Shown: piece by piece, positions 3,001-62,461 of the stretch
Position numbering within the stretch: position 1 is the stretch's first letter
Layout of the letters: every line of letters starts with the position of its first letter
Source: Rebecca billardiae RCC1528
Taxonomy: Eukaryota; Protista; Haptophyta
Reading direction: 5' to 3'
Assembly: GCA_965240325.2 (NCBI GenBank)
Contig: OZ251254.1
Span: 682,001 to 746,000 of the forward strand
Length of the DNA stretch: 64,000 bases
Position numbers and translations under genes: made by a program
Notes under the pieces: generated by a model
The model's database searches: none
Seen by the model: only the letters and a program-made list of their open reading frames with translations
Told to the model about the DNA's origin: nothing

Positions 3001-3155
3001 AGCAGCCGCGCGGGGCCAAGTCGCCAGCCAGCAGCTGCCGCCGCCGAGCCGTGCGCACCCGATCCTCGCCTCCACGGCCGCCCGCGCGCCCCCGCGGTGC
3101 CCGCGCCGGCCCCAGCGGCCCGCCCCGCTGCCCGCGTCCGGACGGCCCCTCAGGC

Positions 3156-3960: not shown

Positions 3961-4113
3961 GCTGAGCGACGGACCACCGACGTGGACGGCGGGCGGTTCA
4001 CCCCGTTTAGCGGCCGCCGGACCGGAATCAGCCTCTGTAACAGTGTATATAGTAACCGTCAATTCTCACCGTGTCCGCGGCGACCGGCGACGTCCTCGAC
4101 GGTGCCGAAGCAA

Positions 4114-6528: not shown

Positions 6529-6570
<42 letters not shown>

Positions 6571-7089
6571 ACGGCGGCGGTAGCGGCGGAGGAGAGGGCG
6601 GCGGCCGCGGCGCTCGTCGCGGACGGGCGCGGCGCCGCCGAGCCGGCGTGGCGCGGCGAGGTGGCGCCCGCCGCGGCGCTGCGCTCTCTGCGCGCGGCGA
6701 TTGCGACGCTCCCGTCCGCCGCGCGCGCCTTTGAGCTCGGCGCGCACCTGCCGCCGCCGGGCGCGGAGGCCGAGGCGCGCACGGCACGGCTTGGCGCTCT
6801 GCAGCTGATCGCGCAGGCGGGTGGAGGCGGGCTCGCCGACGGCCTCGCCCTGGGTGGCGGCGCGCGCGCCCTCCGCGCCGCCATCTTCAAGCCGGGCTGG
6901 ACGGCCGTGGGCGCGCAGGTCCTGTCGGACCGGGGCCGCGCCGAGTGCGCGCACTTTTCGCGCGCGCGGCGCTTCGAGAGCGGGTTCGGCTGGGGCACGG
7001 GCCAGCACAGCGGGCCCGGGCCCGCGGCGTACCCGCTCCTCACGCGCGAGGAGGCCGAGGTGGCCGCACGCGGCGGCAGAGGACGATAG
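4114..7089 (+). CDS. Uncharacterised Ala/Gly-rich protein (~990 aa); possible degenerate N-terminal TIR-like fold; C-terminal PGPAAY motif
   Basis: Long open frame from ATG 4114 with gene-like codon use (GCG/CTC/GAG), poly-Asp tract near 6527-6570, and C-terminal HFSRARRFESG...GPGPAAY reminiscent of SHIPPO/STPG PGPxxY repeats. Divergent from the DUF3110 gene. Confidence 0.65.
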
Positions 7090-7962
7090 TCAGCTGGTGA
7101 TCCTCGTCATCGCCAAGTGATGCCAGTTTCGCGGGTACTACCGAGTTGCCGAGTTTAAGTTGGAACCGTCAAAAACTGACAGATCAGATGTCAGTCTCGG
7201 GCTGTCTCGGACTGAATCTATTCAAGTCATCTAACTGCTGACGACCGAGTCTGTGCCGGGCGCGGGGCGGGCGGCCGCATCCGTCGCGTGATCCGCCGGG
7301 CCCCCGCGCAGGGCGGGCACGAAGTAGGTAGTGCGTTGATGAGTAGTAAGCTGATGGACCTTTTTGTTCAAGGCGTGTGTTCACAGCACGACTACATCGC
7401 CCGGCGGCAATGCCCGCGGCAAGCGCGTCGCATACTCAGGCTGGTACTGTCAGTCAGCACTCGCCGACGCATGCAGTGACTGACTCGTGACGGTTCGAAC
7501 TCTTCTAAGAGGTGCGCCCAGGCCATGCTTTGGCGGCGCAAGCGTGCACAGCGGCCGAGACGAGAGAAAGGCAAAGAGGCCGGGCAAAGCGCGTGGCGCG
7601 CTGTGGCGTGCGAGGCCATCAAGAAGCCACGGGATCCCGCCAGCCCGTTCGGCATGCGCGCCAGCGGCCGAGCCGTTCACGGCGGTACCAGCCGTTCAGT
7701 TTGATGCCGCTGATGCGCCCGGTTCCGGACGCAGAATGGTATCATCGCTAGATAAGTACAGCATATTCATCAGAGATCGGTCATGCAATATGGTCCTGTA
7801 TTCATCAGCCCAACGCTCTTGTACGTTGAAATATGCACGGCGGTTGACGAACGATACGAGAAAAAAGCGCTTAAACAATATGGATCTCAATCGCACCCAA
7901 TCAAACGACGAAGAACGACGACGCGTTCACCACGCAACACACGATCCGCGCGGGCGGGAGAC

Positions 7963-10396: not shown

Positions 10397-10710
10397 GCGG
10401 CGGCGGCTCCACAGGCGCCCGGCGGCACGGATCACCGAGCGTCCGGCTACTGCTATATATCGGCAGTGTTAGTGCCATGCAGCCGGCGTCGTCAGGGCAG
10501 CTGCGCCGCCTCATAGTTAATTATCAGTATCTGACTCCGAGCCACTCCCGGGGCGAGCCACCGCGAGTGCGGTGCCAGCGCGGCGCGGACTACAAGTACC
10601 GAACCCGCCGCCAGAGCCAGAGGCCGAGGCGGCGTGAAGCCGTGACGAAGTCGGTCGGCGAGACCGATGTTGAAGTCGTGCCTTGGCTAGTCGTTGCTTT
10701 ATTGACGTCG

Positions 10711-10760
10711 TTTATTACTAAATATTGTATATTTGTTAATATATATATAATTATATATAG
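10711..10760. repeat. AT-rich/(TA)n island between convergent genes
   Basis: tttattactaaatattgtatatttgttaatatatatataattatatatag within very GC-rich context. Confidence 0.8.
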
Positions 10761-11164
10761 GGTGTTTGTCTCTGCCGTTAGCTCGGCCTCGATGGCTCGA
10801 TCTGCTGCCGTACAGCTTGCTGACCGTCTGACGCCTGCCCGTTGGCGTTGCATACCACGTCGTTATTAGTATATATCGTCGTGATGGGTTCATCAGTTAT
10901 TTCCCGCGAGGATTTTGCCTGTGCGTATTTTTTGGTCTAACCGGTACGGGCGGTAGTATCGTCATTATCAATATAATAAATATCATCGTCTATCAGTCAT
11001 TTATTCAGTTGCATCACTAGGCGGAGTGAGAGTAGTAGCCGGCTGCTCCGCTCCGGGCAAGCAGACGACAACGCATGTAGGAGCACTAGCAGGGCTCCTC
11101 ATCGTCAGATCGACGGCTGCCGGCTCCGCCGCGCCCAGACGATTAGCTGACATCATCAGTAGTG

Positions 11165-46452: not shown

Positions 46453-49400
46453 GCCCGCGCCCGCCGCGCCGCCGCCGCCGCCGCCGCCGCCGCCGAAGGA
46501 GAAGGCGGGCGTGGCGGGCGCGAAGGGCGCGCTCGCCGCAGGCACCGCCGTCGAGGCGGGCGGTGCCGCCGCGCCGCCGCCGCCAAAGAGCGGCGCCGCG
46601 GCCCCGCCGCCCGGCGCACCGAACAAGCCCGCGGCGGGCGGCGGCGCAGACGCGGCGGGCGGCGCGCCGCCGCTGCCACCGCCGCCGCTGCCGTGCGCGG
46701 CCGTCGCCGCGGGCTGGCCGCTGTGCGCGCGAGGGGCGCGGGGGCAGGGCGCGCGTGGAGAGGGGCGTGCGTGCGAGCGTGCGTGCACGCGTGAGCGAGT
46801 GGGCTTGCTAGGGCGCCTCGCGCGGCGCAGCGCGCGCGCAGTGCGCGTGCGGCGGCGGCGCGTGCGCGCACAAGCTGAACACAGCCGGCGGCTGCGCTGT
46901 GCCGGCCGCGTCCGCGCCGCCGCCGGCAAACGGGCCGCCGGCGGCAGCAGCGGACGGCCCGGAGGCGGGCGTCGGCGCGGCCGCGGCCGCAGCGGCGGCC
47001 GTCGGCGCGGCGCTCGTCGGCGCCGGCGCGCCGAAGGAGAAGACGCCGCCCACGCCGCCGCCCACGCCACAACAGCCGCCGCCGCCGCCGCCGCCGCCAA
47101 AGGCGGGCGCAGCGGGCGCGCTCACGGGCGCAGCCGCGGCGGCGGGCGCCGCGGTGGGCGCGGGCGCGCCGAGGGCGGCCGAGCCGCATGCGGCGGCCGA
47201 ACCCACCGCCCCTGCCGCCGCTGCAGCGGGCTTGGCGCCGAACAGCCCGCCACCGCCGCCGCCACCGCCACCGCCACCGCCACCGCCACCGCCACCGCCA
47301 CCGCCACCGCCGCCGCCACCGCCACCGCCACCACCGCCGCCGCCAAACGCGCTGGGCGGCGCGCCAAAGCACGCAGCAGCACCCGCGCCGCCGCCCGCGC
47401 CGGTGCCGCCCAGGCCGCCAAACGTGAATGCCGCGGCGCCGCTGCCGCCCCCGCCGGCGCCGCCAGCGCCCTTGCCGCTGCCGCCGCCCCCGCCCTGCCC
47501 AAAGCTGAACGCAGGCGGCCGCGCTGCCAGCACGGCCGCGCCTCCGCCCGTGGTCGCGGGCGCGGGCGGAGGCAAGGGCGTGGGCGTCGGGGCGAGCGGC
47601 GCGGCCGTCGGGGTGGGCGCAGGCGGCGCGGCGCTGCCCGCCTGCGCGCCCGCCGGGTCCGCGCACAGCGGAGCCGACGCCTGCGCGGCGCGGCGCGCGC
47701 CGAGCGAGCGCGCGCGCGCGCGCGCTGCCGCGTGAGCTGCGCTCGGCCTGGGCGGGGGGCCGCGCACCGCGCGCCGCGGGAGAGAGGGCGCGCGGCGGGC
47801 GCGCCGCGCGCCCGCACCAGTCGGCCGAGGGCTCCGCTCTCCTGCGCCGCCGCGGCGCCGCCCAGCCGCGCGGAGCTCGCGCCGAAAGGCGCGGCCGCTG
47901 CGGCGGCGGGCGCGGCTGCGCGCGCGAGCGCGCGCGCGCGGCGCGGCGGTGGCGCGGGCGGTGCGGGCCGTGAGAGGCGGCGCGGGCGCGGCGCGCGCGC
48001 GCGCTGCGGCGAGGGTGCGCGCGCGCGGCGCGCACCCGTGCCCGCCGCCGCCGCCGCGCCGCCCGCACCGCCGCCGCCGCCGCCACCGAAGCCGAACCGC
48101 ATGGGCACGGCCGCCGCGTCCGCCGGCGCCGGCGCCGCCAAGCCCCGCGCTGCCGCGTGCGCGGGCGGCGCGCGCGCTGGCCTGAACGCGAACAGGGATG
48201 GCGAGGCGGCGGAGGCGGAGGCGGCGGCAGCAGCGGCCGCGCCGCCGCCGCTCGGCTCGGCGCGTGCGCCCAGCCGCGAGCGGTCGAAGGGGCCCGTCGA
48301 CGCGCCGCCCGCGCCAGCGCGCGCGCCGCCGTCCGCGCCGCCGCCGCCATCCGCGCCGCCGCCCGCCGCCGCAGCGCCAAATCCAAAGATGCCGCCGCCC
48401 GCCCCCGCGCTGCTGCCGCCGCCGCCGCCGCCCCAGGGCAGCGGGTTCGATGGGAGCGCCGGGCCGCTGTCGGCGCGCTCCTCCTCGCCGCCGCCCGCGT
48501 CCGCGCGCCGTCCGCGCGAGCGCGCGGCCTTGCCGCCGCCGCTCCCGCCGCCGCCCGTGCCGCCGCCGTTGCCGCCGCCCTCGGCGCCGGTCGCTGCCGT
48601 GTGCGCGGCGGGCAGCAGCGGCGCTGAGAGGCCGAAGGAGGCGGGGCCCGCGCACGCGCCCTCGGGCCCCGCCGCGCTGCCCGCGGCGGCCGGCGGCGGC
48701 GGGCACGCGAAGACCGACGGCAGCGGCAGCGCCGACCGGCCGCCGCCGCCGCCCGCCGCGCCCGCGGCCGGCGGTGTCTGCAGCTGCGTGGCCGGCATTG
48801 GGCGGAAGGCGAAGACCGGCGCCTCCGCCGCGGCGCTGGCGAGCGCGGAGGGCGCGGGCGCGGGCGAGGGCGTGGCCGCCTCGCCGCGCGCGCGGGCCGC
48901 GGGCGAGGGCGACGGCGTGAACTCGAAGAGCGTCGTCCCACCGCCAGACGGCGGACAGCCGGCGCCGGCCGCAGCAGCGGCGGCAGCCGCCGCGGCCGCA
49001 GCCGCCGCCGGCGTGGCGGCGCCGCCTGCGCCGCCGCCGCGCGCAAAGGCGGGCGGCGCGGGCGTGGAGCGCTGCGGCTGGCGCGGCTGCGCGCCGAGCC
49101 CGGCGCTCGGCGGCGGCGGCGTCGACGCCGCGCCGCCGCCGCCGCCGCCGCCGAACGCGAACACGGCGGGTGGGCAGCCTGCGCCCGCCTCGGCCGCGCC
49201 GCCGGCGTCGGCGCGCGCCGCCGCGCCGCGCGCGCCGCCGCTCGGCGGCGCCGCGCGCGCCGCGGCCGCGGGCGACGGCGCGGAGAGCGGCGAGGCGGCC
49301 GCGCCGCCCCGCCCGCCCGCGCCGCGCTGCCGCTTCGCCGCCGCGCCGCCGCCCGAGCCGCCGCCATCGTCGGCGCCATCCGCGCGGCGGCGCGTGCCTC

Positions 49401-49433
<33 letters not shown>

Positions 49434-49879
49434 CGCCGCCTCCGCCGCCGCCGCCGCCTCCGCCGCTTCCGCCGCCGCCGCCGCCGCCGCCGTTGCGCGC
49501 CCTCGCGTCGGCCGAGCCGCCGGCCGTCGGCGTCGGCGGCGGGTGGCGCTCGGCGCGTGCGGAGGCGGGCGTGGCGCCGCGCCCGCCCGCGCCGAGCTGC
49601 GGCGTGGGCGGCAGCGGCAGCGTCGCCGTCGGCGGCGCGCCGCCGCCCTCCTCTGCCCATAGCGAGGCGCGCGCCGCCTCCCACGCCTGTGCGCGCTCCG
49701 CCGAGGGCGGGCGCGGCGCGGGCCGCCACGGCGTCGCGCCGGGGCTGGCGGCGCGCGCGGCGAGGGCGGGGCCGCCGCTGCCGCCGGGGGTGCCCTTCGA
49801 GAGCAGGGGCCCGCGCCTGCCCGCGGGCGAGCCCGCCGCCGCGCCCAGCGCAGCCGCCTGGCTGCCGCCGCTGCCAAAC

Positions 49880-49917
<38 letters not shown>

Positions 49918-52044
49918 CAGCGGCGCGGCGAGGGCGTCGAGGTGCTGCAGGATGCGCGCGGCGGACTCGGAGACGCCCGCCGCGGCGCAGCCCGCGGGCT
50001 GCGCGCACGACAGGCCCTCCGCGCCGCCCGCCGTGCGCGCGGCCTTTGCCGGACGCTCGGCGCCGCCCGCGCCGCCCGCCGCGCCGCCCGCCGCGCCGCC
50101 GCCCGCGCCGCCGCCCGCGCCGCCGCCCGCGCCGCCGCCGCCGCCTGCCGCGCCGAGCGGCTCCGCCGCGGTCGCGGAGAGCGTGCGCTTGACGGCGACG
50201 CCGCTGCCGAGCAGCGGCGCCGCGCCGCCGAACAGGCCCACGCCCGCGCTCAGCGCGCCCGCGCTGCCCAGCTTGGCGCGCGGCTGCGGCGGCGGCAACG
50301 GCGCATAGGCTCGCGCGGGCGGCAGCAGCAGCGAGGGCGGCGCGCGCGCGCCGAGCCAGCCGGCTGGCGCGGGCGCGCCGCCGTGGCCGCCGTACGCGCG
50401 GGCGAGGAGCGTGCGCGCGGAGGGCGCGGGCGGCGCCGCCGCGCGCGGAGCCGCCGCGCCCCTGCCGCCCTCGCCGCGCGCTGCCGCCGCCGCCGCCGCC
50501 GCCGCCGTCGGCGCCGCCGCCGCCGGCTCGGCGCCGCGCAGCAGCCTGGCGCCCAGCGGCGCGCCGCCGCCGTACGGCGCGGCCGCGCCGGCGGCGGCGG
50601 CGTCGACGGCGCTCGCGCTGTGCCCGTCGTCCGCGCCGCCCCCCAGCGCGCCCGCCCCGCCCGCCTCCGCCTCCATCGGCGCCGCCTCCTCCATCCGCTG
50701 CAGCAGCGCGGCCTGCGCGGCGCTGCTGCCGAGCGGGGGCGGGGCAGAGTCGGCAGCGTCGGGCGCGAGGGCGCGCGCGGCGAGCGCCTCGGCGTCGACG
50801 AGCGCGGAGAGCTCGGCGGCCGCGGCGCCGACGGGCGCGCCCACCGGCTGCCCGCCCGGGCTCGCCCAGCCCAAGTCCGAGTCCGCGGCGCCGCCCGCGG
50901 CAGAGGGCGGGCGAAGCAGCGGCGGCAGCGGCGCGCCGCCCGCGCCGCCCCTCGCGCCGCGCGCCGGCGCGGGCCTGGGCGCGGGCGCGCCGAACGCGCT
51001 GCCCCCCTCGTCCGCGAGCGGCTCGGCGCCTGGCGCGACCTGCGCGAGCGGCGGCGGCGGCGGCGGCGCGGCGGCGCGCGCGTGCTGCGCGGCGGCGGCG
51101 GCGGCGGCGCGCGCGGCCGGCGGCGGCGCGCCGTCGGCCGGCGCGCGGCCGCGCGGCTCGTCGGGGCCGAGCGCGGCGGTGAGCGCGCCGAGCACGCCCT
51201 CGCCCCGGTCCGCGCCTACGGCGGCGTGCCCCGCCCCCGCGCGCCCCACCGCCCCACCGCCCTCCTCGCCCGCGCCCTCGGCCGCGCGCGCCGCGCTGCG
51301 CGCCGCGCCATCCGAGCGCCGGTCGAGCGAGCGCAGCACTCGCAGCATGTCGGCGGGCGTGTTGGGCGCGCGGCCGGAGCGCACGCTGGCGAGCTCGGCG
51401 GCGGCGGACGCGCGCCCGCCCGCGCCGCCGGGCACGCCGGGCGTCACCGCCACGGCCGTCGGCCGCAGCGGCGGCGCGGTGCGCGGCGCGTGCGCGCCGT
51501 CCGCGCGCTCGGCGTCGGCCGTCGCGCCCGCGGCGCGCGCGGTGCCGGGCGTGCGGTGGGCGGACTGCAGCGCGCGCGGGACGTGGGCGAGGCGCACGCC
51601 GCTCTGCGTCGCGCCGTCGGGCACGCCAGGCTGCACGCCGGGCGTGGCGCTCGCGGCGCCGCGCTTGGCGCGGCCGCCGCCGCCGCTCGGCGCGCCGAGC
51701 TCGGCGCCGCCGCCCGGCGTGGCGGCGGCGGCGCCGTTGCGCAGCGCGTGGGCGGGCGTGGGCACAGACGGCGTGGCCCGCGCCTCGCCGCGCTCCGCCG
51801 TCGGCGTCGCCGCCGCGGCGATCGCCGCGGCCACGTCGGCGGCGGCGCGCGGCGAGGCCTCGGCGGCCGCGCCGCCGCGCGGCGCGGCGGCGGCGGCGGC
51901 GGCGTCGTCGGCGTCGGCGTCGTCGTCGGCGCCGATGAGTGTGCGCAGGCCGCGGCGCAGGATGCCCGGCGTGCGCGAGCGCACGAAGCCGCTGAGCGAC
52001 CAGCGCGCCTCGTCGGGCGGCGTGTCCGCCGCGCCTCGCGCCAT
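45529..52044 (-). CDS. NUP153: Nup153/Nup1-like nuclear-basket FG nucleoporin, probably 4 exons (introns 47916-48035, 47681-47817, 46721-46871)
   Basis: N-terminal amphipathic GILRRGLRTLIG; SESAARILQHLDALAAPL (cf. Nup153 STARRILQSLEKMSSPL); many FxFG/PFG/LFG repeats; last splice recreates VFSFG; basic C-terminus RREMRRFKRPTKR. Confidence 0.78.
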
Positions 52045-52368
52045 GCTGCTCGCGCTCGGGCGCGTGCGTGGCAAGCGTGCGCCGCTTGCCGAGTGGCCAG
52101 CGCTCGCCGCTCCGCAGCGCTGGCTCTCGCGCGCCGCCCGCCCGGACTGCCACGAGTCCGGGCGAGCCTGCGATCTCTTGTCCTCCGACGCGCTCCGCAG
52201 CCGAGCGACCGGCAGTCGGCACGACTGTCGACTCGAAAATAATGTGGTGCTTGATGCATCAGCGCTGTTGAGTGGTTCCTGAGCAGCGCTTCCCTCGAGC
52301 AAGCAGGGCCGCAGCAGCTGCGCCGCCCTCGCCCTCGAGCGGGGCACGAGGGGGACAGCGCGGTGCGG

Positions 52369-55300
52369 ATGGCGCTGACCGCGCCGACCAAGCCGGCGCG
52401 CGCGGCGTCGAGCGAGAACGCCGTCGACTCCGACCGGCGCCCCATCTCCGTCGCCGTCCGCGTCCGCCCGCTCAACGACGACGAGGAGGACTCGCTCGCG
52501 TCCGACGAGCCGCACTACCTGCACGTGCGCGACGACGCGGCGTCGGTGATCGCGGGCGCGGACTCGCGCGAGCCCGCGATCTTCCGGTTCGACCGCGTCT
52601 TCGGCCCCGACGCGAGCACCGACGACGTCTACTGCTGGCCCGCCGTGCGCGAGGACGTCGTGCTCGGCTGCCTGGACGGCTACAACGGCACGCTCTTCGC
52701 GTACGGCCAGACGGGCACGGGCAAGACGTACACGATGCTGGGCTCGCCCGACGGGGAGCAGGCGGGCGTGCTGCCGATGGCGATCGCCGACATCTTCGAC
52801 TCGATCGCCGAGGGCCAGGCCTCCGGCCGCGCCTACCTGCTGCGGTGCGCGTACATGGAGATCTACAACGAGATCATCAACGACCTGCTCGCGCCCTCGT
52901 CGAGCAACCTCAAGCTGTACGAGGACCCGGTGCAGGGGCTGGTGGTGGGCGAGCTGCGCGAGGAGCCGCTCTTCTCCGCCGAGCAGGCCATGTCGCTCCT
53001 CCAGTACGGCGTCACGCGCATGCACACGGGCGCGACCGCCTCGAACGCGCACTCCTCGCGCAGCCACTCGCTCTTCAGACTCACCGTCGAGTCCAAGGTG
53101 CGCGCGCGCGGGCGAGAGCCGGACGGGCGGGCGGGCGCGCAGGGCTGCGGAGAGCGCCGAGGCGCGCCACGCTTGCGCTGGGCGCGGAGGGGGCAGGGAG
53201 GGCTGGGGCGGCGGCGGGCAGCCGCGCGGCGGGCTGCGTGCGCTCGCTCGCTCACTCGGCCGCGCGCCGCGCCGCGCGCCGCGCGCCGCGCGCCGCGCCG
53301 CTTCGCAGTGGGTGCGCAGCGCGCCGCCGGCCGCCGACGGCTGTGCCGAGGCGGCGCAGTGCGCAAGCACGCTCGGCGCGCCGCCCGCCGGCTCGCGCCG
53401 CCCGTCCGCGCGCGCCGCCGCGTCCGCCGAGCCCGAGCAAGGCGTGGTTGTGCGCTCGTCCACGCTGTCCCTGGTCGACCTGGCGGGCTCGGAGCGCGCC
53501 GCCTCGACCGGGATGGCGGGGGACAGGCTGAAGGAGGGCGGCTACATCAACCGGTGCGGGCCGGGCGCACGCGCGCGGGCGGAGGGCGGGGGGGAGGGGG
53601 GCGTGCGCGCGGGCGTGCGCGCGCGCGCGCCTCGGCTCGCGCGCTCACGGCCGCTGCCGCTGCCGCCGCTGCCGCCGCCGCTGCCGCTGTGCGCACGGCT
53701 GTCGGCTGGGTGCGTGCGCTGCGCCCTGGCTCGCAGCTCGCTGCTCGTGCTCTCCTCCGTGATCTCCAAGCTGTCCGAGGGCAAGGCGGTGGTGGAGTGG
53801 CGCTCGAGCAAGCTCACGCGGCTGCTGCAGCCGTCCCTGGGGGGCAACGCGCGCACGGCCATGCTCTGCATGCTCACGCCCAGTCCGACCGCCGCGCAGG
53901 AGTCGCTCGCCACGCTGCGCTTCGCCACGCGCGCCAAGCGCATCACCAACCACGCGCGCTGCAACGAGACGCTCTCGGACCGCGGTGCGCGCGGGTGGAG
54001 GCTCAGGGGGAGGGTTTGGGGCGGGTGCGGTGCGCTAGGTGAAGGGTTAGGGTTAGGAGGGGTAGGCTCAGGGGGAGGGTTTGGGGTGGGTGCGGTGCGC
54101 GGCGCACGGCGCGAGCGCGGCGGCGGGTGTGCGCGCGCCCCCCTGGCCGAGCGGCGCGCGGCGCTCACTCACGCGCCTCACGCGCCGCCACGCACCGCGC
54201 GCCGCGGCCGGGGCGGCCGCTGTGCGCGCGTGCGCACGCAGCGCTGCTGCGACAGTATGAGCTCGAGATCGCAAAGCTGCGCGCCGAGCTGTCTCAGCTG
54301 CAGCGCGCGCCGCCGCCGAGCGCGCCGCCGCACGCCGGCGCGCCCGCCGCGGCCGAGCACGGCGGCGGCAGTGGCACGGCCGAGCAGGCGGCCGCGCTGT
54401 CCGAGCTGGTAGGCGCGCTGGCCGACGCGGCCGGGCTGGCGCGCCGGCCGGCGCCCGCGCCGCTCGTCGTCGCCGCGCCGGGCGAGGTGCTCGCGCCGCC
54501 CGCGGCCGAGCTCGCGGTGCCGACGCCGCCGCTCACGCCGCCCCCGATGATCACGCCAACAGCGCTCACCGCCGCGCGGCGCGTGTCGGAGGGCTGGGCG
54601 CTGCCGCCGCTCGACTCGGCGGCCGGCCCGGCCGAGTGGGGGGCGGAGGGCGAGGGCGGCGCGCGCGCGCCCGCGAGCGACGGGGGCTCTGGCTGCCTGG
54701 CGCGCCACGGCTCGGCTGCCGTGTCCTCGTGCTGCGCGCTGAGCGCGCACGCCATGGTGGACGCGGAGACGCTCGAGGCGTCGCCCTGGCGGGAGGTGGT
54801 GCAGGAGCAGGTGCGGGCTGTGTGCGGGCTGTGTGTGCATGCGTGTGTGCGCGCTGTGTGTGCGTGCGTGTGTGCGTATGTGTGTGTGCGCGCGCGCACA
54901 GCGGCGCGGGGCGCGGAAGCGCGCTGTGTGCGCGCGCGCGCGCCGCGCTTGGCTGCGCGCTCTCACTGCGCGGCGCGCTCACGCGCCTCCGCTGCCCCGG
55001 CCCGCCCTCCGCGCCCGCACGCGCGTGCCCACCGCAGCACTCGGTGATCTGCGGGCTCGAGCAGAAGATCGAGGGCCTCACGCGGCTCATCCTCGTCTCG
55101 GGCGCGCCCTCCGCGCAGCAGCACAGCCACAGCCACCACCACAGCGGCGGCGGCGGTGGCCACGGCTGCGGCTGCGGCTGCGGCCCGTACGCGCCGGGCG
55201 GCCACGCGCCCCACCCTCCGCTCTCGCGCGCGGAGACGACGGCGAGCGCGCTCAGCATTGAGAGCGCGGCGCGCGCGTGCGCCGCGGCGACGGCGGGCGG

Positions 55301-57584
55301 CGGCGGCGGCGCGGACGGCTGCGGCCGCGCCGCCTCGATGCGGCTGCCGCCCGCCGCCGGCGCGCAGCATGCCGAGCCGTGCGGCGCTAGCCCCGGCCGG
55401 CGCGCGGGCGCGGCGCCGCAGTGGGCGAGCTTCCGCCGGCGCATGTCGGAGCCGTTTGTGCGCGTGGACAGCGCGCCCAGCTCGGGGCCGCCCGACCGGC
55501 GGCTCTCGTTTGGGCGGCAGGCGGCGGCGGCGGCCGCGGCGGCGGCGGCTGCGGCGGCGGGCGGCGGCGCGCGGCGCGGGCGCGACGACGGCGGCGTGGG
55601 CTCCTTCAACACGGCGCTGATCGCCAGGGCCGCGCGGCACGCGACGGCGGAGGGCGAGGCGGCGGCGGCGGCGGCGGCGGAGGGGTCGGACGCGTCCGCG
55701 CCGCAGCGCCAGGACGAGTGGCCGGCGATGTCCGCGCCCGCCTCGCCGCGCCGGCAGCGCGCCGCGAGCGTGTGTGTCTCCGGTGCGTTCGCCGACCCTC
55801 GAAACCTCGGCCCGCTCGCAGCGACATGTGCCGCCGCGGACGCGCGCAGGCTGCCGCACCCGTCGCTGCGCGCGCGCGTGGCCGAGCTGCAGGAGTGCTC
55901 GGCGCGCAAGGACATGCAGATTGCGCTGCTGCTCGACTTCACGCTCACGCAGCTCGCGAGAGACGCGGACGCGCGCGCCGCCGACGCCGACGCCGCCGCG
56001 GCCGCCGCGGCCGGCGCCGCGCCCGCGCCCGCCGCCGCGCCGCCGCACCCCACGCCGCTGCCGCCAGCCGCCGCCGCGCTGCAGTCGGAGGCGGACGAGA
56101 TCGTGCGCCAGTTCGTGCTGCTCGAGACCGCGCCGATCACGCTCGCGGGCTCGCAGCTCGCGGTCGAGGCGGCGGACGGCAGCCTGCACTCGCCGCTGCG
56201 CACCGCGCTGCGCCGCAGCCGAGCCGCGGCCTCGCGCAGAGGCGTCGGCGACGGGCGCGGCGCGGACGCGGACGCGGACGCGGACGCGGCGGAGGAGGCG
56301 GAGGAGGCGCTGCTCGCGCAGGCGGACATCTTGGAGCGGCGCACGCTCGGCCTCCCGCCCGGCGTGCGCGGCCTCGCCGCCGAGCCCGAGCGCGTCGCAG
56401 AGGCGGCGGCGGCCGCCGCGGCGTGCGTGCGCATGCGCCTGCTGCACGCGCCCGGACTCACGCCTCCCACGTGGGCGATGGCGGCGGAGGCGGCGCCGCC
56501 GCCGCGCGCCGCGGCGTGCGCGGCGTGCGCGGGCGCGGGCGCGGGCGTCGACGGCGCCGCCGCCGACGCGGCCGCGGACGGCGACGGCCTCACTCTGGCC
56601 GTGCCGCTGCGCACCGGCGGCGGCGGCGGCGCGGCGGCGTGCGCCGAGGGCGCGGGCGCGCCGACCGTGTGCTGCGTGCTGCCCGCGGCGGCCAGGGCGC
56701 TGAGCGAGCGACGCGCCAGCCCGGAGCAGCGGCTCGCGCTGCCCAGCGGCGCCGCCGGCGCGGACGGCGCCGCCGCCTCCTCCTCGCCCTCTGCCTCGCC
56801 GCTCAGCTCCGCCGCCCACTCGCCCGGCGTGTCGCCGGGGCCTTCGCCCGGCCGCAGCCCGCGCTCGGGCGGCGCGCGCCAGCCGCGCTGCTGGCCGCTC
56901 GAGCCGACGGTGGAGGAGCCGCCCGCCTCGCCCGGCTGCTGCGCGAACGGCGGCGCGGGCGGTGCCGCGGGCGGCGCCGTGAACGGCGCGCCCGAGGCTG
57001 CCGCCGCCACCGCCACCACGGCCGCCGCCGCCATGGCTGCGGCGGCAGCGGCGGAGGCGGAGGGCGTGCGGCCGCCGCCGGTGGCTGAGCTGACCGCCAA
57101 GTTCAACGCGCAGGAGGCCGCCGCCGCCGCCGCCGCCGCCGCCGCGTCGCCGCAGCCGCGGATGCAGCGGCGCCACTCGGTGGCGTGCGTGCAGCACTCG
57201 GGCGGCGCGGGCGGCTGCTCGCTGCTCGATCAGACGAGCCCGCACGGCGCGGAGCTCGGGCTGGCGCTCAACGGCCGAACCTCCGACTCTCTGCGCGGCC
57301 GGCGCAGCCGCAGCTTCAGAGGCGGCGCGGACGGCGCGGAGGCGGGAGGCAGCCTGCGCCGCGCGCGCGGCAACAGCGCGGGTGAGCATCTGTCACCGCA
57401 GCCGCAGCAGCCGCAGCCGCAGCAGCCGCAGCCGCGCGCCGGCGCGCACCGGCGGAGCAGCGACGGCGGCGGCGGCGGCGGCGGGGGCAGCTTTGGGCCG
57501 GGCGCGGGCGGCGCGGGCGCGGCGGTGATTGCGATGGCGGCGGCGGCGGCGGGTGGTGGTGCCGGCGGCGGCGGCAGCGGCGGC

Positions 57585-57615
<31 letters not shown>

Positions 57616-58948
57616 GCGGCGGCGGCGGCGGCAGCGGCGCCGGCACCAGCCCCCCACTGCCCGCCACCGCGGGCGCGCCCGCGCTGATCGGGCCACAAGC
57701 GCCCGTGACTGCGAGCGCGACGACGGCCTCTCACGCACGCGGTGGCATGCGCCATTCGTGCGCGTGCGCGCGCCCGCCGCTCGTCCAGCCCGCCGCCGCC
57801 GAGCCAGGCTCCCCGCAGCGCTCGCCCGCGCGCGCCGCCGCCGCCGCCGCCGACGGCCGCCCGCCGCCGCTGCGCGCCGAGTGCCGCGCGCTGCGCCGAG
57901 ACGTCGGCACGCTGGCGGGCGCGCTGCGCGCGTGCAAGGCGGGGCAGCGCGCGCCGCGCGTCGCGCTGCTGCGCAAGATTGGCGCGGCCGCAGACCCCGC
58001 GCAGACGGCCGCCGCGGCCGAGGCGTGGGGGCACCCCGAGTTTGACGGTGCGTGCGCGCAGCAGCCGCGGCAGGGCGGCGCACCGCGCGCCGCGCTGCGC
58101 GCGCGCGCGCCGCGCCGACGCGCGCGCGCGCGCGGCTCACGCAGGCGCGCCACGCCGCGCCGCGCGCGCGCGTGCCCCCGCCCTGCTCGCGCGCGCGCGC
58201 AGCGGGCGGCCTCCTGAGCGCGCTGCGCGAGCCGCTGCTCGGCGCGCTCGCGGACGGCGCGCTGCCCGTCTGCATGGAGGCCGCCGCCACCGTGCGCGCC
58301 CTCGCGTGCGCGGGCGTGGGCGGGCGCGCACTCTCGCCGTTCGCGGAGGCGGTGCTGCCGGCGGCGCTGCGGCTCACGGCCGCGCCCAACACGCAGCTGG
58401 CGCGCGCGGCGCACGACGCGGCGGTGGCGCTGCTCGACTCGTCCGCCCCGCCCGCGCGGCTGCTCCCCGCCGTCCTCGACGGCGCGCGCGACCGTCGCAA
58501 GCTGCCCCTGCGCCGCCAGTGCCTTGAGTACGCGCGCTACACGCTGCGCACGCGGCCGGCGCGCGAGCTGGAGAAGGCGGCGGCGGCGCTGGACTCGCTG
58601 CTCGCGTCCGCGCTGATCGAGGAGGGCGCGGCGGACGGCGCGCTCGGGCCCGCGCTCGCGGACACGTTCGCCGCGTACGAGCAGCACTGGCCGCGCGCCG
58701 CCGCCGCGATCGCGCGCGCGTGCGGCGCGCCCACGCGCGCCGCGCTCGCGGCCGCGCGCGCGCGCGCCGCGGCCGCGGGCGAGCAGCGCGCGGATGCAGA
58801 CGCAGACGGCGGCGCGGCCGCGGAGGCGGAGGCGGCGGGTGGCGCGGAGGGCGCGCCGAACGGCGCGGCGGGCGGCGGCGCGTGCGAGCGCTCGCCCGCG
58901 CCACCGCCGCGCCTCCTCGGCGCGCGCGCAGAGGAGGGCGGCGGCTAG
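52369..58948 (+). CDS. Kinesin-7 (CENP-E-like) motor with C-terminal CLASP-type TOG/HEAT domain, 6 exons, ~1848 aa (introns 53098-53308, 53554-53736, 53985-54241, 54811-55037, 58048-58202)
   Basis: VAVRVRPL, FAYGQTGTGKT, YMEIYNE, NAHSSRSH, LVDLAGSE, SKLTRLLQPSLGGNA; neck ALLRQYELEIAKLRAEL and KIEGLTRLILVS typical of kinesin-7. Spliced length 5547 nt is in frame. Confidence 0.85.
53999..54100 (+). repeat. 37-bp direct repeat flanking a telomere-like GGGTTAGGGTTAGG insert (intronic)
   Basis: 53999-54035 and 54064-54100 differ at one base; spacer TAGGTGAAGGGTTAGGGTTAGGAGGGGT. Confidence 0.8.
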
Positions 58949-59311
58949 CTTTCGGAATGCGCGCGCTGCTTATGGGCGACAATGTCTGACTGGCCGTGCG
59001 CGTGACCTACTGACCATCAAGTGCTCGTCGCGCTGCCCCGCATCGTTGCTGGAGTCGTCGGTGAGTCTGGCGGCGCGTGTCGTCGACGATGATATATGCG
59101 ATGATGATGTCTAGCGCTATATACACAGTTTACGTACTCATCAGAATATAAGCAGACGCACAGCACAGCTCGTCAGTCACTAGTCAGGCATGATAACGCG
59201 CATGATATTGATGACCATCGTCATCATCATCGTCAAAGGAATGAAAGGGGCGGCCGAGTGAAGGGAGTGTACTACGTTATGGGGCGATACGAGACCAACC
59301 GTCGCGTCAGC

Positions 59312-62300
59312 ATGGCGGCGCTCCTCGTTGTCGCGCTCATCGTCCTGCCGCTCGCCTCCTCGGCCGAGGAGGCGAGCAGCGCGGCGGAGGAGACGTGGGT
59401 GCCCGTGAGCGTGCACGGCGCGGACGGCTCCCCGCCGCACGGCGTGCCGCGCGCCGAGCTCTTCGTCAGCCTCTGCCCGCTCGACTTGACGGCGCCGACG
59501 CGAGGCGGCGGCGGCGGCGGCGCGGCCGCCCGGCCGCCGCCGCCCGAGCGCGCGCCGCCCTCGTTCGCGGAGCTCGTGGCGCGCGCGCGGTGCGACGCGC
59601 CGGGTCGGCTGACCAGCGTGCCGCTCGACGTCGCGCTCGACGCGCTCGGCGACGCCGCCGCCGGCCGCCGCCTCGAGCCGAGCGGGCTGGTCTTTCACAC
59701 TGAGGCCGCGCCGCCCGCGGCGGCGGTGCGCGCGCTGCTCGCGGCGGCGCGCGGCGCGGAGGGCGGCGCGCGCGTGCTGATCGAGCCCGCGCCGCTCGCC
59801 GCGGTGCTCTGGCCCTGCGCCGCGCAGCACGACGGCGCGTCCGCGTGCGCGCGCGCCCAGCTCTCGCTCGCGCGGGACGTGGGCGTGCTGCTCTGCTCCG
59901 CGCTGGCCGTGCGAACCGGCGGCGCGCGCGGCGTGCTGCGGCTGAGCGCGGGCGCGCCGCCGGGCGCGTGCCTCGTCGCGCTGCACGGCGCGCTCTCGCC
60001 GGCGCTCGACGCCATCGTCGCGCGCGCATTCCCGCGCACGCCCTGGCTCTTCGCCGCGCCGGAGCCGGAGCGCTCCCTCTGGCGGCTGCTCGCGCGCGCG
60101 CACGCGCCGCGGCCGGCGCCGGCGGCGCGCGGCGCGGGCTGGGAGGCGGAGTGCGCGGCGCCGAGCGGGCGCGAGGCGCCGGGCGCGGCGGTGCGCGCGC
60201 TGCTGCGCGCGCTGCACGCGGACGAGCTGGGCGCCGCCGAGCCGCAGCCCGACGGGCGGCGGCGGCTGTCCGCGCACTCTGCCGCCGCGCGCTGCGCCGC
60301 GCAGCTTGCCGCCGGCTGCGACGGCGCGCTGAGGGCGTTGGACGCACACGCTGCCGCCGACGCGGCGGCCGGCGGCGAGGGCGGGCCGCGGCCTCGCGCC
60401 GATGCGCACACCTCGGCGCGCGGGCTGGTCCTCGACCTGAGCGCGTCGGCACGAGCGCGGCCGAGCGCGGCGCAGCTGACCGCGCACCACTTTGGGCTGC
60501 GGCCGCAGCCGTGCGCTGAGCAGCCGTGCGCTGAGCAGCCGTGCGGCCTCGGCGGCGCAGCGCGTGACGGCGGCCGGGCGGGCGCTGCCGGCGGCCATGC
60601 GGAGGCTGCCCCCGGCGCGGAGGCAGCGGAGGCGTCGTGGGAGGCGCACGCGGCGGAGGCGCCGAGCGACGCAGGCACGCCGGTGGCGCAGCCGCTGGGG
60701 CGGGAGGCGCGCGAGGCCGAGCACAAGCTGCTCGCCCCTCGGAGCGATCGTCTGCGCGCCCTCGCGCGCCAGGCGGCCACGGAGTGGCTGGGGCGCGCGC
60801 GCGGCGGTGGCGGTGCGCACGGCGGCGGCGCGCCGCCGTCCGAGCCCGCCGCGCCCAGCGGGCGCGCGGGCGGCGCGGCGCCACCCGGCGGTGCGGCCGG
60901 TGGCGCGCAGAGCGGAGCGGCGGCGGCGCGTGGCGGCGGCGCGCGCGCGCCCGCCAACGCCACCGCCACCGCGCAGCTGCCGCCGGCGCGGCCGCCCCTT
61001 CCGCCGCTGCGCCCGCTCCCGGCCGGTGCGCCCGCCGGCTGCGTGCTGCAGTGGCTCGGCTCCGCCGAGTTCGCGGCGCGCTGGTGGGAGCGCGCCCCCG
61101 CGCTGCTGCACACGGACGGCTTCTTCGTCGACGCACCGGGCGCGGAGGGCGCGGCACCGGGCGCACGCGGCGCGCGGGAGGAGGGCGGCGAGGCGGCGGA
61201 GGCGGCGGTGGTGGAGGAGGGCGTCCTCCCGCGCACGGGCGGGGCGGGCGGCCGCCGCATGACCCTCGAGCACATCCTCGACCGCTCCACGCTGTTCACC
61301 CTCGAGCCCGCGGCCGGCGGCAGCGGCGCGCGGCGCGGCGGTGCCGCACCCGAGGGCGCGGACGGCGGCGCGCGGCCGTTCCGGCTTCTGAACGGCTCGT
61401 TCAGCCGGCCGGCGTCGCCGCGCTGGCTGCCGCGCGCGCCCGCGCGGCCGAGTGGCGCGCACGTCGGCGCTGCGCTCGCGGCCGGCCTCACCGCCGTCTT
61501 CAGCTCGGTGCAAAAGTGGCCGGAGGCGGCGAGTGTGCGCGCGCTCGGCCGCGCGCTCGGCCGCGCGCTCGGCCGGCGCGTCCACGTGAACGCGTACCTC
61601 GCCCCGCCCGGACTCGAGGTCGGGATGGCGGCGCACAACGACCGGCACGACTTTGTGGCGGCGCAGCTGAGCGGGCGCAAGCGCTGGCGCGTGTGGCTGC
61701 ACGCGCCGATGATGCTGCCCATCCGAGACGAGGCGCGCGAGTTCGGCGTGAGCACACGCGGCCGCGCGCTCGAGCTCGCCGCCCTCGGCGCGCCGGACGT
61801 GGACGTGGAGCTGCGCCCAGGGCAGCTGCTGTACGTGCCGCGCGGGGCGGTGCACCTCACCTCGACCGCCGCCGTCGCGGCGGGCGCGGCGGACGCGCCG
61901 CCGGCGGCGCGCGCCGCCGGCTCGGCCGAGCGGCGGCCCGACGAGGACGAGGCCGGCGCAGCCGCCGCCGCGCCGCCCGCCGCCGCGGCTGCCGAGGCCG
62001 AGGGCGGCTCCGCCGCCGCGCCCTCACTCCACCTCACCCTCGCCATCGCCACCGACGCGTTCCACGTGCCGTGGGCGCTCGGCGCGAGCGCCGCGCCGAG
62101 CGTGCCGGCGCACGACTTCCTGGCGCGCGCGCTCGCGCAGGCCGTGTCGGCGCGCGCCGAGGCCTCGCTGGACGCGCGCCGCACGGTGCGCGTGGGCGGC
62201 GAGCCGCGCGCCGCGTGGGTTGAGCGCGTGCGCGCCGAGCTGCACGCGGCCGTCGACGAGCTGCTCGGCCCCGACGAGCGCGGCCTCTTCCTGCCGCAGC

Positions 62301-62461
62301 TTGAGGACAGGCTGGACGCGGTGCTGCAGGTGGGCACGCTCGACCTGCTGCCGCCCCCCGGCGCGGAGCGCGCTGAGTTTGAATACTTGCCCGCCCAGGG
62401 TCACGGCGCATGCGCGGAGGCGCGCGCTGATGAGCCTGACTCTGATGCTGTCGGCAGATGA
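59312..62461 (+). CDS. Secretory-pathway JmjC (cupin_4/ROX-type) 2-oxoglutarate oxygenase with degenerate N-terminal sulfotransferase-like domain
   Basis: Signal peptide MAALLVVALIVLPLASSA; NAYLAPP, AHNDRHD (HxD), QLSGRKRW, LRPGQLLYVPRGAVH, SLHLTL. N-terminal EPSGLVFH...VLIEP...FPRTPWLF. Confidence 0.85.
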   Translation: MAALLVVALIVLPLASSAEEASSAAEETWVPVSVHGADGSPPHGVPRAELFVSLCPLDLTAPTRGGGGGGAAARPPPPERAPPSFAELVARARCDAPGRLTSVPLDVALDALGDAAAGRRLEPSGLVFHTEAAPPAAAVRALLAAARGAEGGARVLIEPAPLAAVLWPCAAQHDGASACARAQLSLARDVGVLLCSALAVRTGGARGVLRLSAGAPPGACLVALHGALSPALDAIVARAFPRTPWLFAAPEPERSLWRLLARAHAPRPAPAARGAGWEAECAAPSGREAPGAAVRALLRALHADELGAAEPQPDGRRRLSAHSAAARCAAQLAAGCDGALRALDAHAAADAAAGGEGGPRPRADAHTSARGLVLDLSASARARPSAAQLTAHHFGLRPQPCAEQPCAEQPCGLGGAARDGGRAGAAGGHAEAAPGAEAAEASWEAHAAEAPSDAGTPVAQPLGREAREAEHKLLAPRSDRLRALARQAATEWLGRARGGGGAHGGGAPPSEPAAPSGRAGGAAPPGGAAGGAQSGAAAARGGGARAPANATATAQLPPARPPLPPLRPLPAGAPAGCVLQWLGSAEFAARWWERAPALLHTDGFFVDAPGAEGAAPGARGAREEGGEAAEAAVVEEGVLPRTGGAGGRRMTLEHILDRSTLFTLEPAAGGSGARRGGAAPEGADGGARPFRLLNGSFSRPASPRWLPRAPARPSGAHVGAALAAGLTAVFSSVQKWPEAASVRALGRALGRALGRRVHVNAYLAPPGLEVGMAAHNDRHDFVAAQLSGRKRWRVWLHAPMMLPIRDEAREFGVSTRGRALELAALGAPDVDVELRPGQLLYVPRGAVHLTSTAAVAAGAADAPPAARAAGSAERRPDEDEAGAAAAAPPAAAAAEAEGGSAAAPSLHLTLAIATDAFHVPWALGASAAPSVPAHDFLARALAQAVSARAEASLDARRTVRVGGEPRAAWVERVRAELHAAVDELLGPDERGLFLPQLEDRLDAVLQVGTLDLLPPPGAERAEFEYLPAQGHGACAEARADEPDSDAVGR

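What the first reader, a model, noticed from the sequence alone, without database searches (positions are those of the whole stretch)
52369..58948. CENP-E-like kinesin-7 fused to a CLASP-type TOG domain
Seen: one spliced frame runs from a kinesin-7 motor to a C-terminal HEAT array (about 57880-58770): RVALLRKI...VCMEAAATVRAL...FAEAVLPAALRL...RLLPAVLDGARDRRKLPLRRQCLEYARYTL...ELEKAAAAL...FAAYEQHWPRAA. From memory this parallels CLASP TOG2 (RVNALKKI...VVREACITL...GAEAIMPTIFNL...RLIPVI...VRRRCFEFL...LERH...YWGFHSHFSREA). Known: in animals CENP-E recruits CLASP to kinetochores as a separate protein. Inference: a Rosetta-stone fusion of motor and microtubule regulator for the spindle, flagella or haptonema. 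Tubulin-contact loops look eroded (no Trp in the first HEAT loop; DLRSQ replaced by DGALP), so the domain may be a scaffold.
Basis: partly seen in the sequence, partly recalled or inferred. Interest (0 to 1): 0.7.

Follow-up and report, generated by a model that had tools for sequence, protein, structure and literature searches.

The report
Kinesin-7 motor fused to TOG domain
A very GC-rich haptophyte alga appears to encode, in one six-exon gene, a microtubule motor of the CENP-E (kinesin-7) group joined by a long floppy linker to a single domain derived from the microtubule stabiliser CLASP. I found no description of this combination, but no RNA data were available to prove the join.

Summary
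A six-exon gene on the + strand (52369-58948, 1,848 codons) runs from an intact kinesin motor to a C-terminal TOG domain.

- **Single gene:** third-codon GC is 0.94-1.00 in every exon and flat in the five GTGCG...CGCAG introns. The only GC dips lie just outside the gene. No RNA run was listed, so the join rests on sequence alone.
- **Motor class:** trees built from exon 1 (support 99/92) and exon 3 (88/96) place it with CENP-E/KIN-7 references, apart from kinesin-2 and kinesin-12.
- **C-terminal domain:** it is a diverged CLASP-TOG2-type TOG. The evidence is hhalign probability 99.3 % (E 5e-20), best and only PDB sequence hit CLASP2 TOG2, and a pLDDT 96 model with Z 20.5 to TOG2. Every distant hit among 1.84 billion proteins is a CLASP_N protein.
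- **Pfam threshold:** CLASP_N reaches only 16 of 27 bits on exon 6 alone.
- **Tubulin contacts:** mostly lost (HEAT A Trp to Arg, DLRS to DGAL, HEAT E Arg gone). The basic HEAT D loop is kept.
- **Relatives:** fragments only. One keeps the same intron and a long upstream reading frame. None reaches a motor.
- **Canonical CLASP:** encoded elsewhere in the genome.

This is a new architecture built from two known families. Its function is inferred.

The parts
52369..53097 (+). Exon 1: start codon and the N-terminal two thirds of the kinesin motor (P-loop GQTGTGKT, switch I SSRSH).
   Evidence: Pfam Kinesin 5.5e-55. Best PDB hit is CENP-E at 142 bits against 121 for the next family. Motifs checked. 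GC3 is 1.00.
53098..53308 (+). Intron 1 (GTGCGC...CGCAG, phase 0). An alternative in-frame acceptor would start exon 2 at 53321.
   Evidence: Read from the sequence. GC is flat across the three positions, 0.86-0.89.
53309..53553 (+). Exon 2: an Ala/Pro-rich loop insertion of about 45 residues, then switch II (DLAGSE).
   Evidence: Pfam Kinesin on exons 2-3, 3.5e-31. Motif checked. GC3 is 0.95.
53554..53736 (+). Intron 2 (GTGCGG...CGCAG, phase 2).
   Evidence: Splicing restores INR|SLLVLSSVISKL, which is continuous with the kinesin profile.
53737..53984 (+). Exon 3: the last third of the motor (KLTRLL, LRFATRA) and the neck linker.
   Evidence: Pfam profile positions 257-327 of 327. BLASTP best is a cnidarian CENP-E at 56 % identity; the exon 3 tree places it on the kinesin-7 side at 88/96.
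53985..54241 (+). Intron 3 (GTGCGC...CGCAG, phase 1).
   Evidence: Splicing gives ...NETLSDR-A-LLRQYELEIAKLRAEL, a motor-to-neck continuation.
54242..54810 (+). Exon 4: a short neck coil, then an Ala/Pro/Gly-rich linker.
   Evidence: GC3 0.95. Composition A 24 %, P 13 %, G 10 %.
54811..55037 (+). Intron 4 (GTGCGG...CGCAG, phase 0). It contains GT/GC-type simple sequence.
   Evidence: No codon periodicity. If the intron were retained, the frame would stop at 55045-55047.
55038..58047 (+). Exon 5: a linker of about 1,000 residues, low in complexity (A 27 %, G 14 %, P 9 %). It has a short conserved motif at about 55866-55940. Its last ~60 codons (57867-58047) encode HEAT repeat A of the TOG domain.
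   Evidence: GC3 is 0.88-0.98 in every 50-codon block, and the first in-frame ATG comes only at codon 101. No Pfam domain was found. The motif is shared with relative L010. HEAT A aligns to canonical CLASP TOGs.
58048..58202 (+). Intron 5 (GTGCGT...CGCAG, phase 1), which splits the TOG domain after HEAT A.
   Evidence: A relative from another organism, L009, has an intron at the same site and phase.
58203..58948 (+). Exon 6: TOG HEAT repeats B-F (58205-58768), a short Ala/Gly/Glu tail and the TAG stop.
   Evidence: PDB phmmer best and only hit below E 1 is CLASP2 TOG2, E 0.0017. hhalign to a CLASP_N set gives 99.3 %, E 4.9e-20. AF2 pLDDT 95.9. Foldseek TM 0.83 and VIA Z 20.5 to CLASP TOG2.

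Best explanation
**What it is.** One gene encodes a protein of about 1,848 residues with four parts:
1. An N-terminal kinesin-7-clade motor with all ATPase and microtubule-binding motifs intact.
2. A short neck coil.
3. A mostly disordered Ala/Gly/Pro-rich linker of about 1,150 residues.
4. A single C-terminal TOG domain that descends from the CLASP TOG2 lineage.

**How it most likely works (inferred).** The plus-end-directed motor carries and concentrates the TOG domain at microtubule plus ends. That would make it a one-chain counterpart of the engineered tip-targeted TOG2 constructs that suffice to suppress catastrophe. The TOG domain would act there as a second, ATP-independent contact with the microtubule end. 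It would do this through a non-canonical basic loop face (Arg in place of the HEAT A Trp; a conserved RDRRK..LRR loop in HEAT D) rather than the classical Trp-centred grip on tubulin.

**Shown versus inferred.** Shown: the exon structure, the motor clade, the TOG homology and fold, and the loss of canonical contact residues. Inferred: that the exons are joined in the mRNA, the direction of movement, and any effect on microtubule dynamics.
For: **Single gene**
- Continuous GC3 periodicity across all exons.
- Compositional gene borders lie only at 52152-52341 and 58945-59355.
- All five introns have GTGCG...CGCAG ends with fitting phases.
- Exon 5 has a coding signature (GC3 0.97) for 100 codons before its first ATG.
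- The exon 5 / exon 6 intron is conserved in site and phase in L009.
- L010 has a 470-codon upstream reading frame that shares a 25-residue motif with exon 5.

**Motor**
- Pfam Kinesin hits and intact motifs.
- CENP-E is the best PDB hit.
- Exon 1 tree 99/92 and exon 3 tree 88/96 with CENP-E/KIN-7K references.

**TOG domain**
- Homology and fold.
- The basic HEAT D loop is conserved among relatives.

**Literature**
- A single tip-targeted or isolated TOG2 suppresses catastrophe (PMC6035287 and PMC5994897, listed).
Against: - No transcript evidence: no RNA run was listed.
- No relative's contig links a motor to the TOG. In Pavlovales sp. the visible 7 kb upstream of the TOG exons holds no kinesin, and beyond that lies a gap.
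- Pfam CLASP_N on exon 6 alone is below the family threshold, 16 against 27 bits.
- Four of the five tubulin-binding determinants named for CLASP1 TOG2 (W338, S457/V458, R503; PMC6641166) are changed. Classical tubulin binding is therefore doubtful.
- The best-conserved part of the family is HEAT F and the helix after it, not the loop face.
- Exon 3 alone scores higher against PDB kinesin-2 (67 bits) than against CENP-E (56 bits).
- The high-confidence model was built with canonical CLASP rows in its alignment, which may pull it towards the TOG2 shape.
Confidence: 0.45

Rival explanations
1. The gene is the same, but the TOG domain is a protein-protein adaptor rather than a microtubule regulator. 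This would parallel the TOG-like C-terminal domain of CLASP, which has lost tubulin binding and recruits partners. On this reading the kinesin uses the domain to bind cargo or a docking site such as a kinetochore or basal-body component.
For: - The canonical tubulin contacts are lost: Trp to Arg, DLRS to DGAL, and the HEAT E Arg gone.
- The most conserved surface in the family is HEAT F and the following helix; the invariant positions F155, W162, P163, R171, C173 and R178 all lie there.
- The CLASP C-terminal domain sets a precedent for a TOG fold turned into a partner-binding module, and it binds CENP-E (PMC10443533).
- The model also fits the CLASP2 C-terminal domain well, Z 17.7-17.9.
Against: - By sequence the domain is TOG2-type, not C-terminal-domain-type. 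The PDB sequence hits are TOG2 only, and in the own genome only the CLASP TOG2 matches.
- The loop face stays strongly basic and the HEAT D loop is conserved. That suits an acidic tubulin surface.
Confidence: 0.3
2. The gene model is wrong and there are two genes. One would be a shorter kinesin ending near 55047 through retention of intron 4, or ending somewhere in exon 5. The other would be a separate gene for a disordered protein with the C-terminal TOG domain.
For: - No RNA evidence was available.
- Stop codons are rare in every frame at over 80 % GC, so open frames prove little.
- The splice motifs GTGCG and CGCAG are common here, 51 and 40 copies in the gene.
- No relative shows the motor and the TOG on one contig.
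- Several other kinesin fusions have been flagged in this genome by the same kind of reading.
Against: - Exon 5 carries the coding signature from its first codon, 300 nt before any in-frame ATG.
- There is no GC dip inside the gene of the kind that marks its two borders.
- The phases of all five introns fit.
- The exon 3 / exon 4 join recreates a typical motor-to-neck sequence.
Confidence: 0.15
3. The TOG-like tail is a decaying relic with no function of its own.
For: Its Pfam score is below threshold and its contact residues are eroded.
Against: - GC3 is 0.96, like the other exons.
- Fragments from at least four other sources keep 39-60 % identity, with invariant residues and the same intron.
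- The model is confident and compact.
Confidence: 0.05

Closest known systems
CENP-E / kinesin-7 (animal CENP-E, plant KIN-7/NACK)
   Same: The N-terminal motor groups with CENP-E and KIN-7K references, and CENP-E is the best solved-structure hit. Catalytic motifs are intact and the neck begins ALLRQYELEI. None of the 11 own-genome kinesin motors included in that tree (the closest matches among 38 motor hits in the genome) joins this clade.
   Different: The motor is the earliest branch of that clade, not a clear CENP-E orthologue. It has no long coiled-coil stalk; the stalk is replaced by an Ala/Gly/Pro-rich linker of about 1,150 residues with no Pfam domain. No kinetochore-binding tail is recognisable. 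The tail is a TOG domain.
CLASP TOG2 (PDB 3WOY, 4K92, 6MQ7; Pfam CLASP_N PF12348)
   Same: Homologous and of the same fold. hhalign gives 99.3 %. Identity to the genome's own CLASP TOG2 is 30-32 %. Structural fit is Z 20.1-20.5 at rmsd 1.8-2.0 over 176-178 residues. HEAT A-F are collinear.
   Different: It is a single TOG at the C-terminus of a motor, not part of a TOG array with SxIP motifs and a C-terminal domain. It falls below the Pfam threshold on exon 6 alone. The HEAT A Trp, the DLRS motif and the HEAT E Arg are lost. The canonical CLASP is a separate gene at C18:1468879-1471819.
Engineered tip-targeted or isolated CLASP TOG2 (PMC6035287, PMC5994897)
   Same: One TOG2-type domain brought to microtubule ends by a separate targeting module.
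   Different: In those studies targeting is by EB-binding peptides or by concentration in vitro, and the TOG2 has its full set of tubulin contacts. Here the targeting module would be a motor and the contacts are diverged. No activity has been measured.
CLASP C-terminal TOG-like domain (PMC10443533; PDB 8WHI, 8WHL)
   Same: A TOG fold that has given up classical tubulin binding. The structural fit is good, Z about 17.8.
   Different: No sequence-level match to it was found. The sequence affinity is to TOG2.

Membership tests
Kinesin superfamily (PF00225) | Motor domain above the Pfam threshold, with P-loop, switch I and switch II. | tested here: met
   187 bits on exon 1 and 109 bits on exons 2-3, against a cut-off of 29.3. 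GQTGTGKT, SSRSH and DLAGSE are present.
Kinesin-7 (CENP-E / KIN-7) | The motor groups with kinesin-7 references in a phylogeny. | tested here: met
   The exon 1 tree has a 24-row clade holding all three kinesin-7-named references at 99/92. It excludes KIF3A, KIF15 and 11 own paralogues. The exon 3 tree gives 88/96. Caveats: the labels are the sources' own names, only three families are labelled, the exons were analysed apart, and exon 3 alone scores best against PDB kinesin-2.
Kinesin-7 (CENP-E / KIN-7) | A long coiled-coil stalk after the neck (CENP-E proper). | tested here: inconclusive
   No coiled-coil predictor was run. Composition (A 27 %, G 14 %, P 9 %) and the absence of any Pfam hit point to disorder, with only short helical motifs.
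Kinesin-7 (CENP-E / KIN-7) | A kinetochore-targeting C-terminal region. | not testable with these tools
   No profile for it was matched. The C-terminus is a TOG domain instead.
TOG domain, CLASP_N type (PF12348) | Pfam gathering threshold of 27 bits. | tested here: not met
   Exon 6 alone scores 16 bits at E 0.009, covering profile positions 71-225 of 227. HEAT A lies on exon 5. The joined sequence was not searched, by operator rule.
TOG domain, CLASP_N type (PF12348) | Homology to bona fide CLASP_N domains by more sensitive tests. | tested here: met
   hhalign 99.3 %, E 4.9e-20. All nine distant hits of an exhaustive HMMER search are CLASP_N proteins at Pfam 1e-26 to 1e-45. BLASTP to the genome's own CLASP TOG2 gives E 2e-7. 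The ESM Atlas nearest clusters are CLASP_N at 0.95.
TOG domain, CLASP_N type (PF12348) | A six-HEAT-repeat TOG fold. | tested here: met
   HEAT B-F were modelled at pLDDT 95.9. Z is 20.5, rmsd 2.0 and 178 residues align to CLASP2 TOG2, and the top 27 structural matches are all TOG domains. HEAT A was aligned separately from the exon 5 tail. Caveat: the model's alignment contains canonical CLASP rows.
TOG domain, CLASP_N type (PF12348) | The tubulin-binding determinants of CLASP1 TOG2: HR A Trp, HR D Ser-Val, HR E Arg, HR F Lys (PMC6641166). | tested here: not met
   Trp is replaced by Arg here and in L009. SV is replaced by KL, the HR E Arg is lost, and only a basic residue near the HR F position (R178) is kept.
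CLASP protein family | An array of several TOG domains plus a C-terminal partner-binding domain. | tested here: not met
   This gene has only one TOG. The genome's multi-TOG CLASP lies at C18:1468879-1471819.

The most novel reading that the evidence does not exclude
This is a natural single-chain plus-end regulator. The genome's only kinesin-7 would carry its own TOG2-derived domain to microtubule ends or kinetochores. One polypeptide would then do what animals achieve by CENP-E or EB proteins recruiting CLASP. The domain's loop face would be re-tooled (Arg for Trp, a poly-basic HEAT D loop) to grip the microtubule end in a new way.
Probability: 0.25. Interest if true: 0.75.

Novelty: new variant of a known kind. 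Interest (0 to 1): 0.58.

Why it matters
Kinesins and TOG proteins are the two main classes of proteins that control microtubule ends, and in the systems studied so far they work together as separate proteins. A motor with a built-in TOG2-type domain would be a natural version of the minimal tip-targeted TOG2 constructs used to dissect CLASP. It would show how far a TOG domain can diverge from the Trp-centred tubulin grip and still be kept by selection. It would also give a handle on mitosis and flagellar microtubules in haptophytes, where almost nothing is known. If the domain turns out to be a partner-binding module instead, it would be a second independent case, after the CLASP C-terminal domain, of a TOG fold turned to that use.

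Tried and rejected
**RNA evidence**
- The look-up of sequencing runs listed no run, so read laying could not be used.

**Searches for the fusion elsewhere**
- A metagenome scan with exon 6 found no relative.
- Two word searches with the motor found no close orthologue. Identity was at most about 50 % and partial.
- The contigs of the two best unnamed motors, L029 and L031, have no TOG downstream.
- In Pavlovales sp. (L011) the TOG exons lie at 9588-10932. No kinesin appears in the readable 2938-10000, positions 1-2937 read N, and I could not walk further.
- No paralogue of exon 6 exists in the own genome.
- A paper search for kinesin together with CLASP_N found nothing relevant.

**Weak or uninformative results**
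- Single-sequence AF2 gave only pLDDT 67.5, though CLASP TOG2 was already its top Foldseek hit.
- BLASTP of the exon 5 motif against L010 reported only a 15-residue core at E 0.016. The 13-of-25 ungapped identity was read by eye.
- No SxIP motif in a basic context was found.

- The joined spliced protein was not searched, folded or used in a tree. Each exon was handled by reference.
Full report
**Is it there?**

The window is extremely GC-rich, 70-90 % across the region. Every frame is open for hundreds of codons, so an open frame is no evidence by itself. Codon-position composition is decisive instead.

- GC at one codon position stays at 0.9-1.0 from about 52300 to 58750.

Reading the junctions gives six exons:

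| Exon | Coordinates |
|---|---|
| E1 | 52369-53097 |
| E2 | 53309-53553 |
| E3 | 53737-53984 |
| E4 | 54242-54810 |
| E5 | 55038-58047 |
| E6 | 58203-58948 |

- Together they make 5,547 nt, or 1,848 codons, ending in TAG.
- All five introns start GTGCG and end CGCAG, and their phases fit. These motifs are common here (51 and 40 copies in the gene), so they are consistent rather than decisive.
- GC3 is 0.94-1.00 in each exon. The introns are flat across the three positions.

**One gene or two?**

- Across the whole 64-kb window there are 30 places where 120-nt GC falls below 0.62. Two of them flank this gene, at 52152-52341 and 58945-59355, and none lies inside it.
- Exon 5 has GC3 of 0.97 over its first 100 codons, yet its first in-frame ATG is at codon 101. 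It therefore has to be joined to something upstream.
- The exon 3 / exon 4 join recreates a normal motor-to-neck sequence.
- The exon 5 / exon 6 intron interrupts the TOG domain between HEAT A and HEAT B.
- A relative from another organism (L009, Logan contig, GC 0.71) has an intron at the same codon and in the same phase: GAT G|GTGCGC there, GAC G|GTGCGT here. The TOG part is therefore not a separate small gene.
- The upstream frame in L010 stays open for 470 codons to the contig end. It shares an ungapped 25-residue motif with exon 5 residues 277-301, with 13 identities read. BLASTP reports only the core of it at E 0.016.

Two things are missing. There is no RNA evidence, because no run was listed. 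And no relative's contig reaches back to a motor. I put the single-gene model at about 0.8.

**The motor**

- Pfam Kinesin scores 5.5e-55 on exon 1 and 3.5e-31 on exons 2-3.
- The P-loop, switch I, switch II, KLTRLL and LRFATRA motifs are all intact.
- Exon 1's best solved-structure matches are the two CENP-E motor entries at 142 bits. The next families, kinesin-1 and KIF15, reach 121 bits.
- A word search gave CENP-E and KIN-7K names at 147-148 bits, but arthropod KIF3A followed at 141-144 bits. Because these were so close, I built trees.
- The exon 1 tree used 50 rows under IQ-TREE with LG+C20. Exon 1 falls in a 24-row clade with all three kinesin-7-named references at 99/92, as its earliest branch. 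The KIF3A clade, the KIF15 pair and 11 paralogues from the own genome all fall outside.
- Exon 3 analysed alone has a cnidarian CENP-E as its best BLASTP match at 56 % identity. In its tree it sits on the kinesin-7 side of an 88/96 branch.
- One caveat: against PDB sequences alone, exon 3 scores best with kinesin-2, 67 bits against 56 for CENP-E.

The exons were never concatenated. "Kinesin-7 clade" is supported. "CENP-E orthologue" is not shown.

**The linker**

Exons 4 and 5 are Ala/Gly/Pro/Ser-rich and have no Pfam domain. This differs from the long coiled coil of CENP-E.

**The C-terminal domain**

Sequence evidence:
- Exon 6 alone gives Pfam CLASP_N at E 0.009. That is 16 bits against a cut-off of 27, collinear over profile positions 71-225.
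- Against all PDB sequences, the only hit below E 1 is CLASP2 TOG2 (3WOY, E 0.0017).
- An exhaustive HMMER search of 1.84 billion representatives returned only 12 proteins.
  - Three were fragments at 43-60 % identity.
  - Nine were more distant proteins: eight that I scanned and found to be bona fide CLASP_N proteins (Pfam 1e-26 to 1e-45), and a fourth short fragment.
- A profile of the family against a profile of those CLASP TOGs gives hhalign probability 99.3 %, E 4.9e-20, over 179 columns.
- Within the own genome, only TOG2 of the canonical CLASP matches exon 6, at 30-32 % identity and E 2e-7 to 4e-6. The other CLASP_N loci do not match.
- The ESM Atlas puts CLASP_N clusters nearest, at 0.95.

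Structure evidence:
- With an alignment, AlphaFold2 gives pLDDT 95.9.
- Foldseek ranks CLASP2 and CLASP1 TOG2 first, at TM 0.82-0.84 and rmsd about 2 Å.
- VIA-align gives Z 20.1-20.5 for TOG2, 18.6 for Alp14/Stu2 TOGs and 17.7-17.9 for the CLASP2 C-terminal TOG-like domain. Non-TOG HEAT proteins reach 14.7 or less.
- The alignment fed to AlphaFold contained canonical CLASP rows, so the closeness to TOG2 in particular is partly built in. The single-sequence model (pLDDT 67.5) already had TOG2 on top.
- HEAT A, encoded at the end of exon 5, aligns to HEAT A of canonical CLASP TOGs.

**Eroded contacts**

PMC6641166 names five tubulin-binding determinants of CLASP1 TOG2: W338, S457/V458, R503 and K534.

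- The Trp column holds Arg in this gene and in L009.
- The invariant DLRS of HEAT B is DGAL here and DTTP in P0001.
- The HEAT E Arg is gone.
- HEAT D keeps a strongly basic, conserved loop (RDRRK..LRR).
- A basic residue remains near the HEAT F position.
- The residues invariant within the family cluster in HEAT F and the helix after it.

So the classical grip on tubulin is unlikely. A basic loop face and a conserved C-terminal surface remain.

**Distribution**

The close fragments come from these sources:
- two Logan runs
- two JGI metagenomes
- one ENA assembly
- Pavlovales sp. GCA_026770615.1, named in bioRxiv 10.1101/2025.06.04.657860

The family looks confined to a small haptophyte group. 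I found no paper that mentions a kinesin together with a CLASP_N domain. None of the kinesin hits listed carries PF12348.

**Mechanism**

A single TOG2 suffices to suppress catastrophe when tip-targeted (PMC6035287) or even in isolation (PMC5994897); both papers are listed. My best reading, at about 0.45 including the gene model, is a plus-end-directed motor that delivers its own TOG2-derived domain to microtubule ends.

The main rival, at about 0.3, is that the domain has become a partner-binding module like the CLASP C-terminal domain. That domain is TOG-like, binds no tubulin and is the site that binds CENP-E (PMC10443533).

In addition, the genome keeps its ordinary CLASP.

**Limits**

- The spliced protein was never joined for a search, a fold or a tree. 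Pfam on the whole TOG domain is therefore untested.
- No reads were laid.
- Other notes of this scan flag several kinesin fusions in this genome. I took that as a reason for caution, not as support.

Noticed in passing
window 59258-62461 (+): The downstream neighbour is a long reading frame with a JmjC_2 domain (Pfam 6.3e-13, residues 774-871) behind a hydrophobic N-terminus and a long Ala/Gly/Arg-rich region.
   Followed up: partly
window 46808-52222 (-): The upstream neighbour on the minus strand has an FG/GLFG-like repeat-rich reading frame (FGAP, FSFG, FTFG, LFGAK) separated by Gly/Ala runs. It looks like an FG-nucleoporin, but this was read only.
   Followed up: no
window 53309-53440 (+): Exon 2 begins with an Ala/Pro-rich insertion of about 45 residues between the end of exon 1 (TVESK) and the strand before switch II. 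That is far longer than the same loop in CENP-E. GC3 says it is coding, but an alternative acceptor would start exon 2 at 53321 and the true boundary needs cDNA.
   Followed up: partly
G000:C5:3199919-3200608 and C5:3204228-3204917: Two kinesin motor stretches 4.3 kb apart give identical scores to exon 1 (116.9 bits, 39 %). This looks like a recent tandem duplication.
   Followed up: no
G000:C18:329212-329730 and C16:1971071-1971760 (L020, L023): Kinesin motors on two different contigs are near-identical in the tree, with end branches of 0.06 and 0.14 joined at 100/100. This suggests a recent dispersed duplicate.
   Followed up: no
window 54815-54900 (+), intron 4: A GT/GC-type simple-sequence tract (TGTGTGCG repeats) lies inside intron 4.
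   Followed up: no
L009 2293-2556 (-): In the relative's contig, the gene downstream of the TOG exon is a synaptobrevin on the opposite strand. In the window it is a JmjC gene, so the neighbourhood is not conserved.
   Followed up: no
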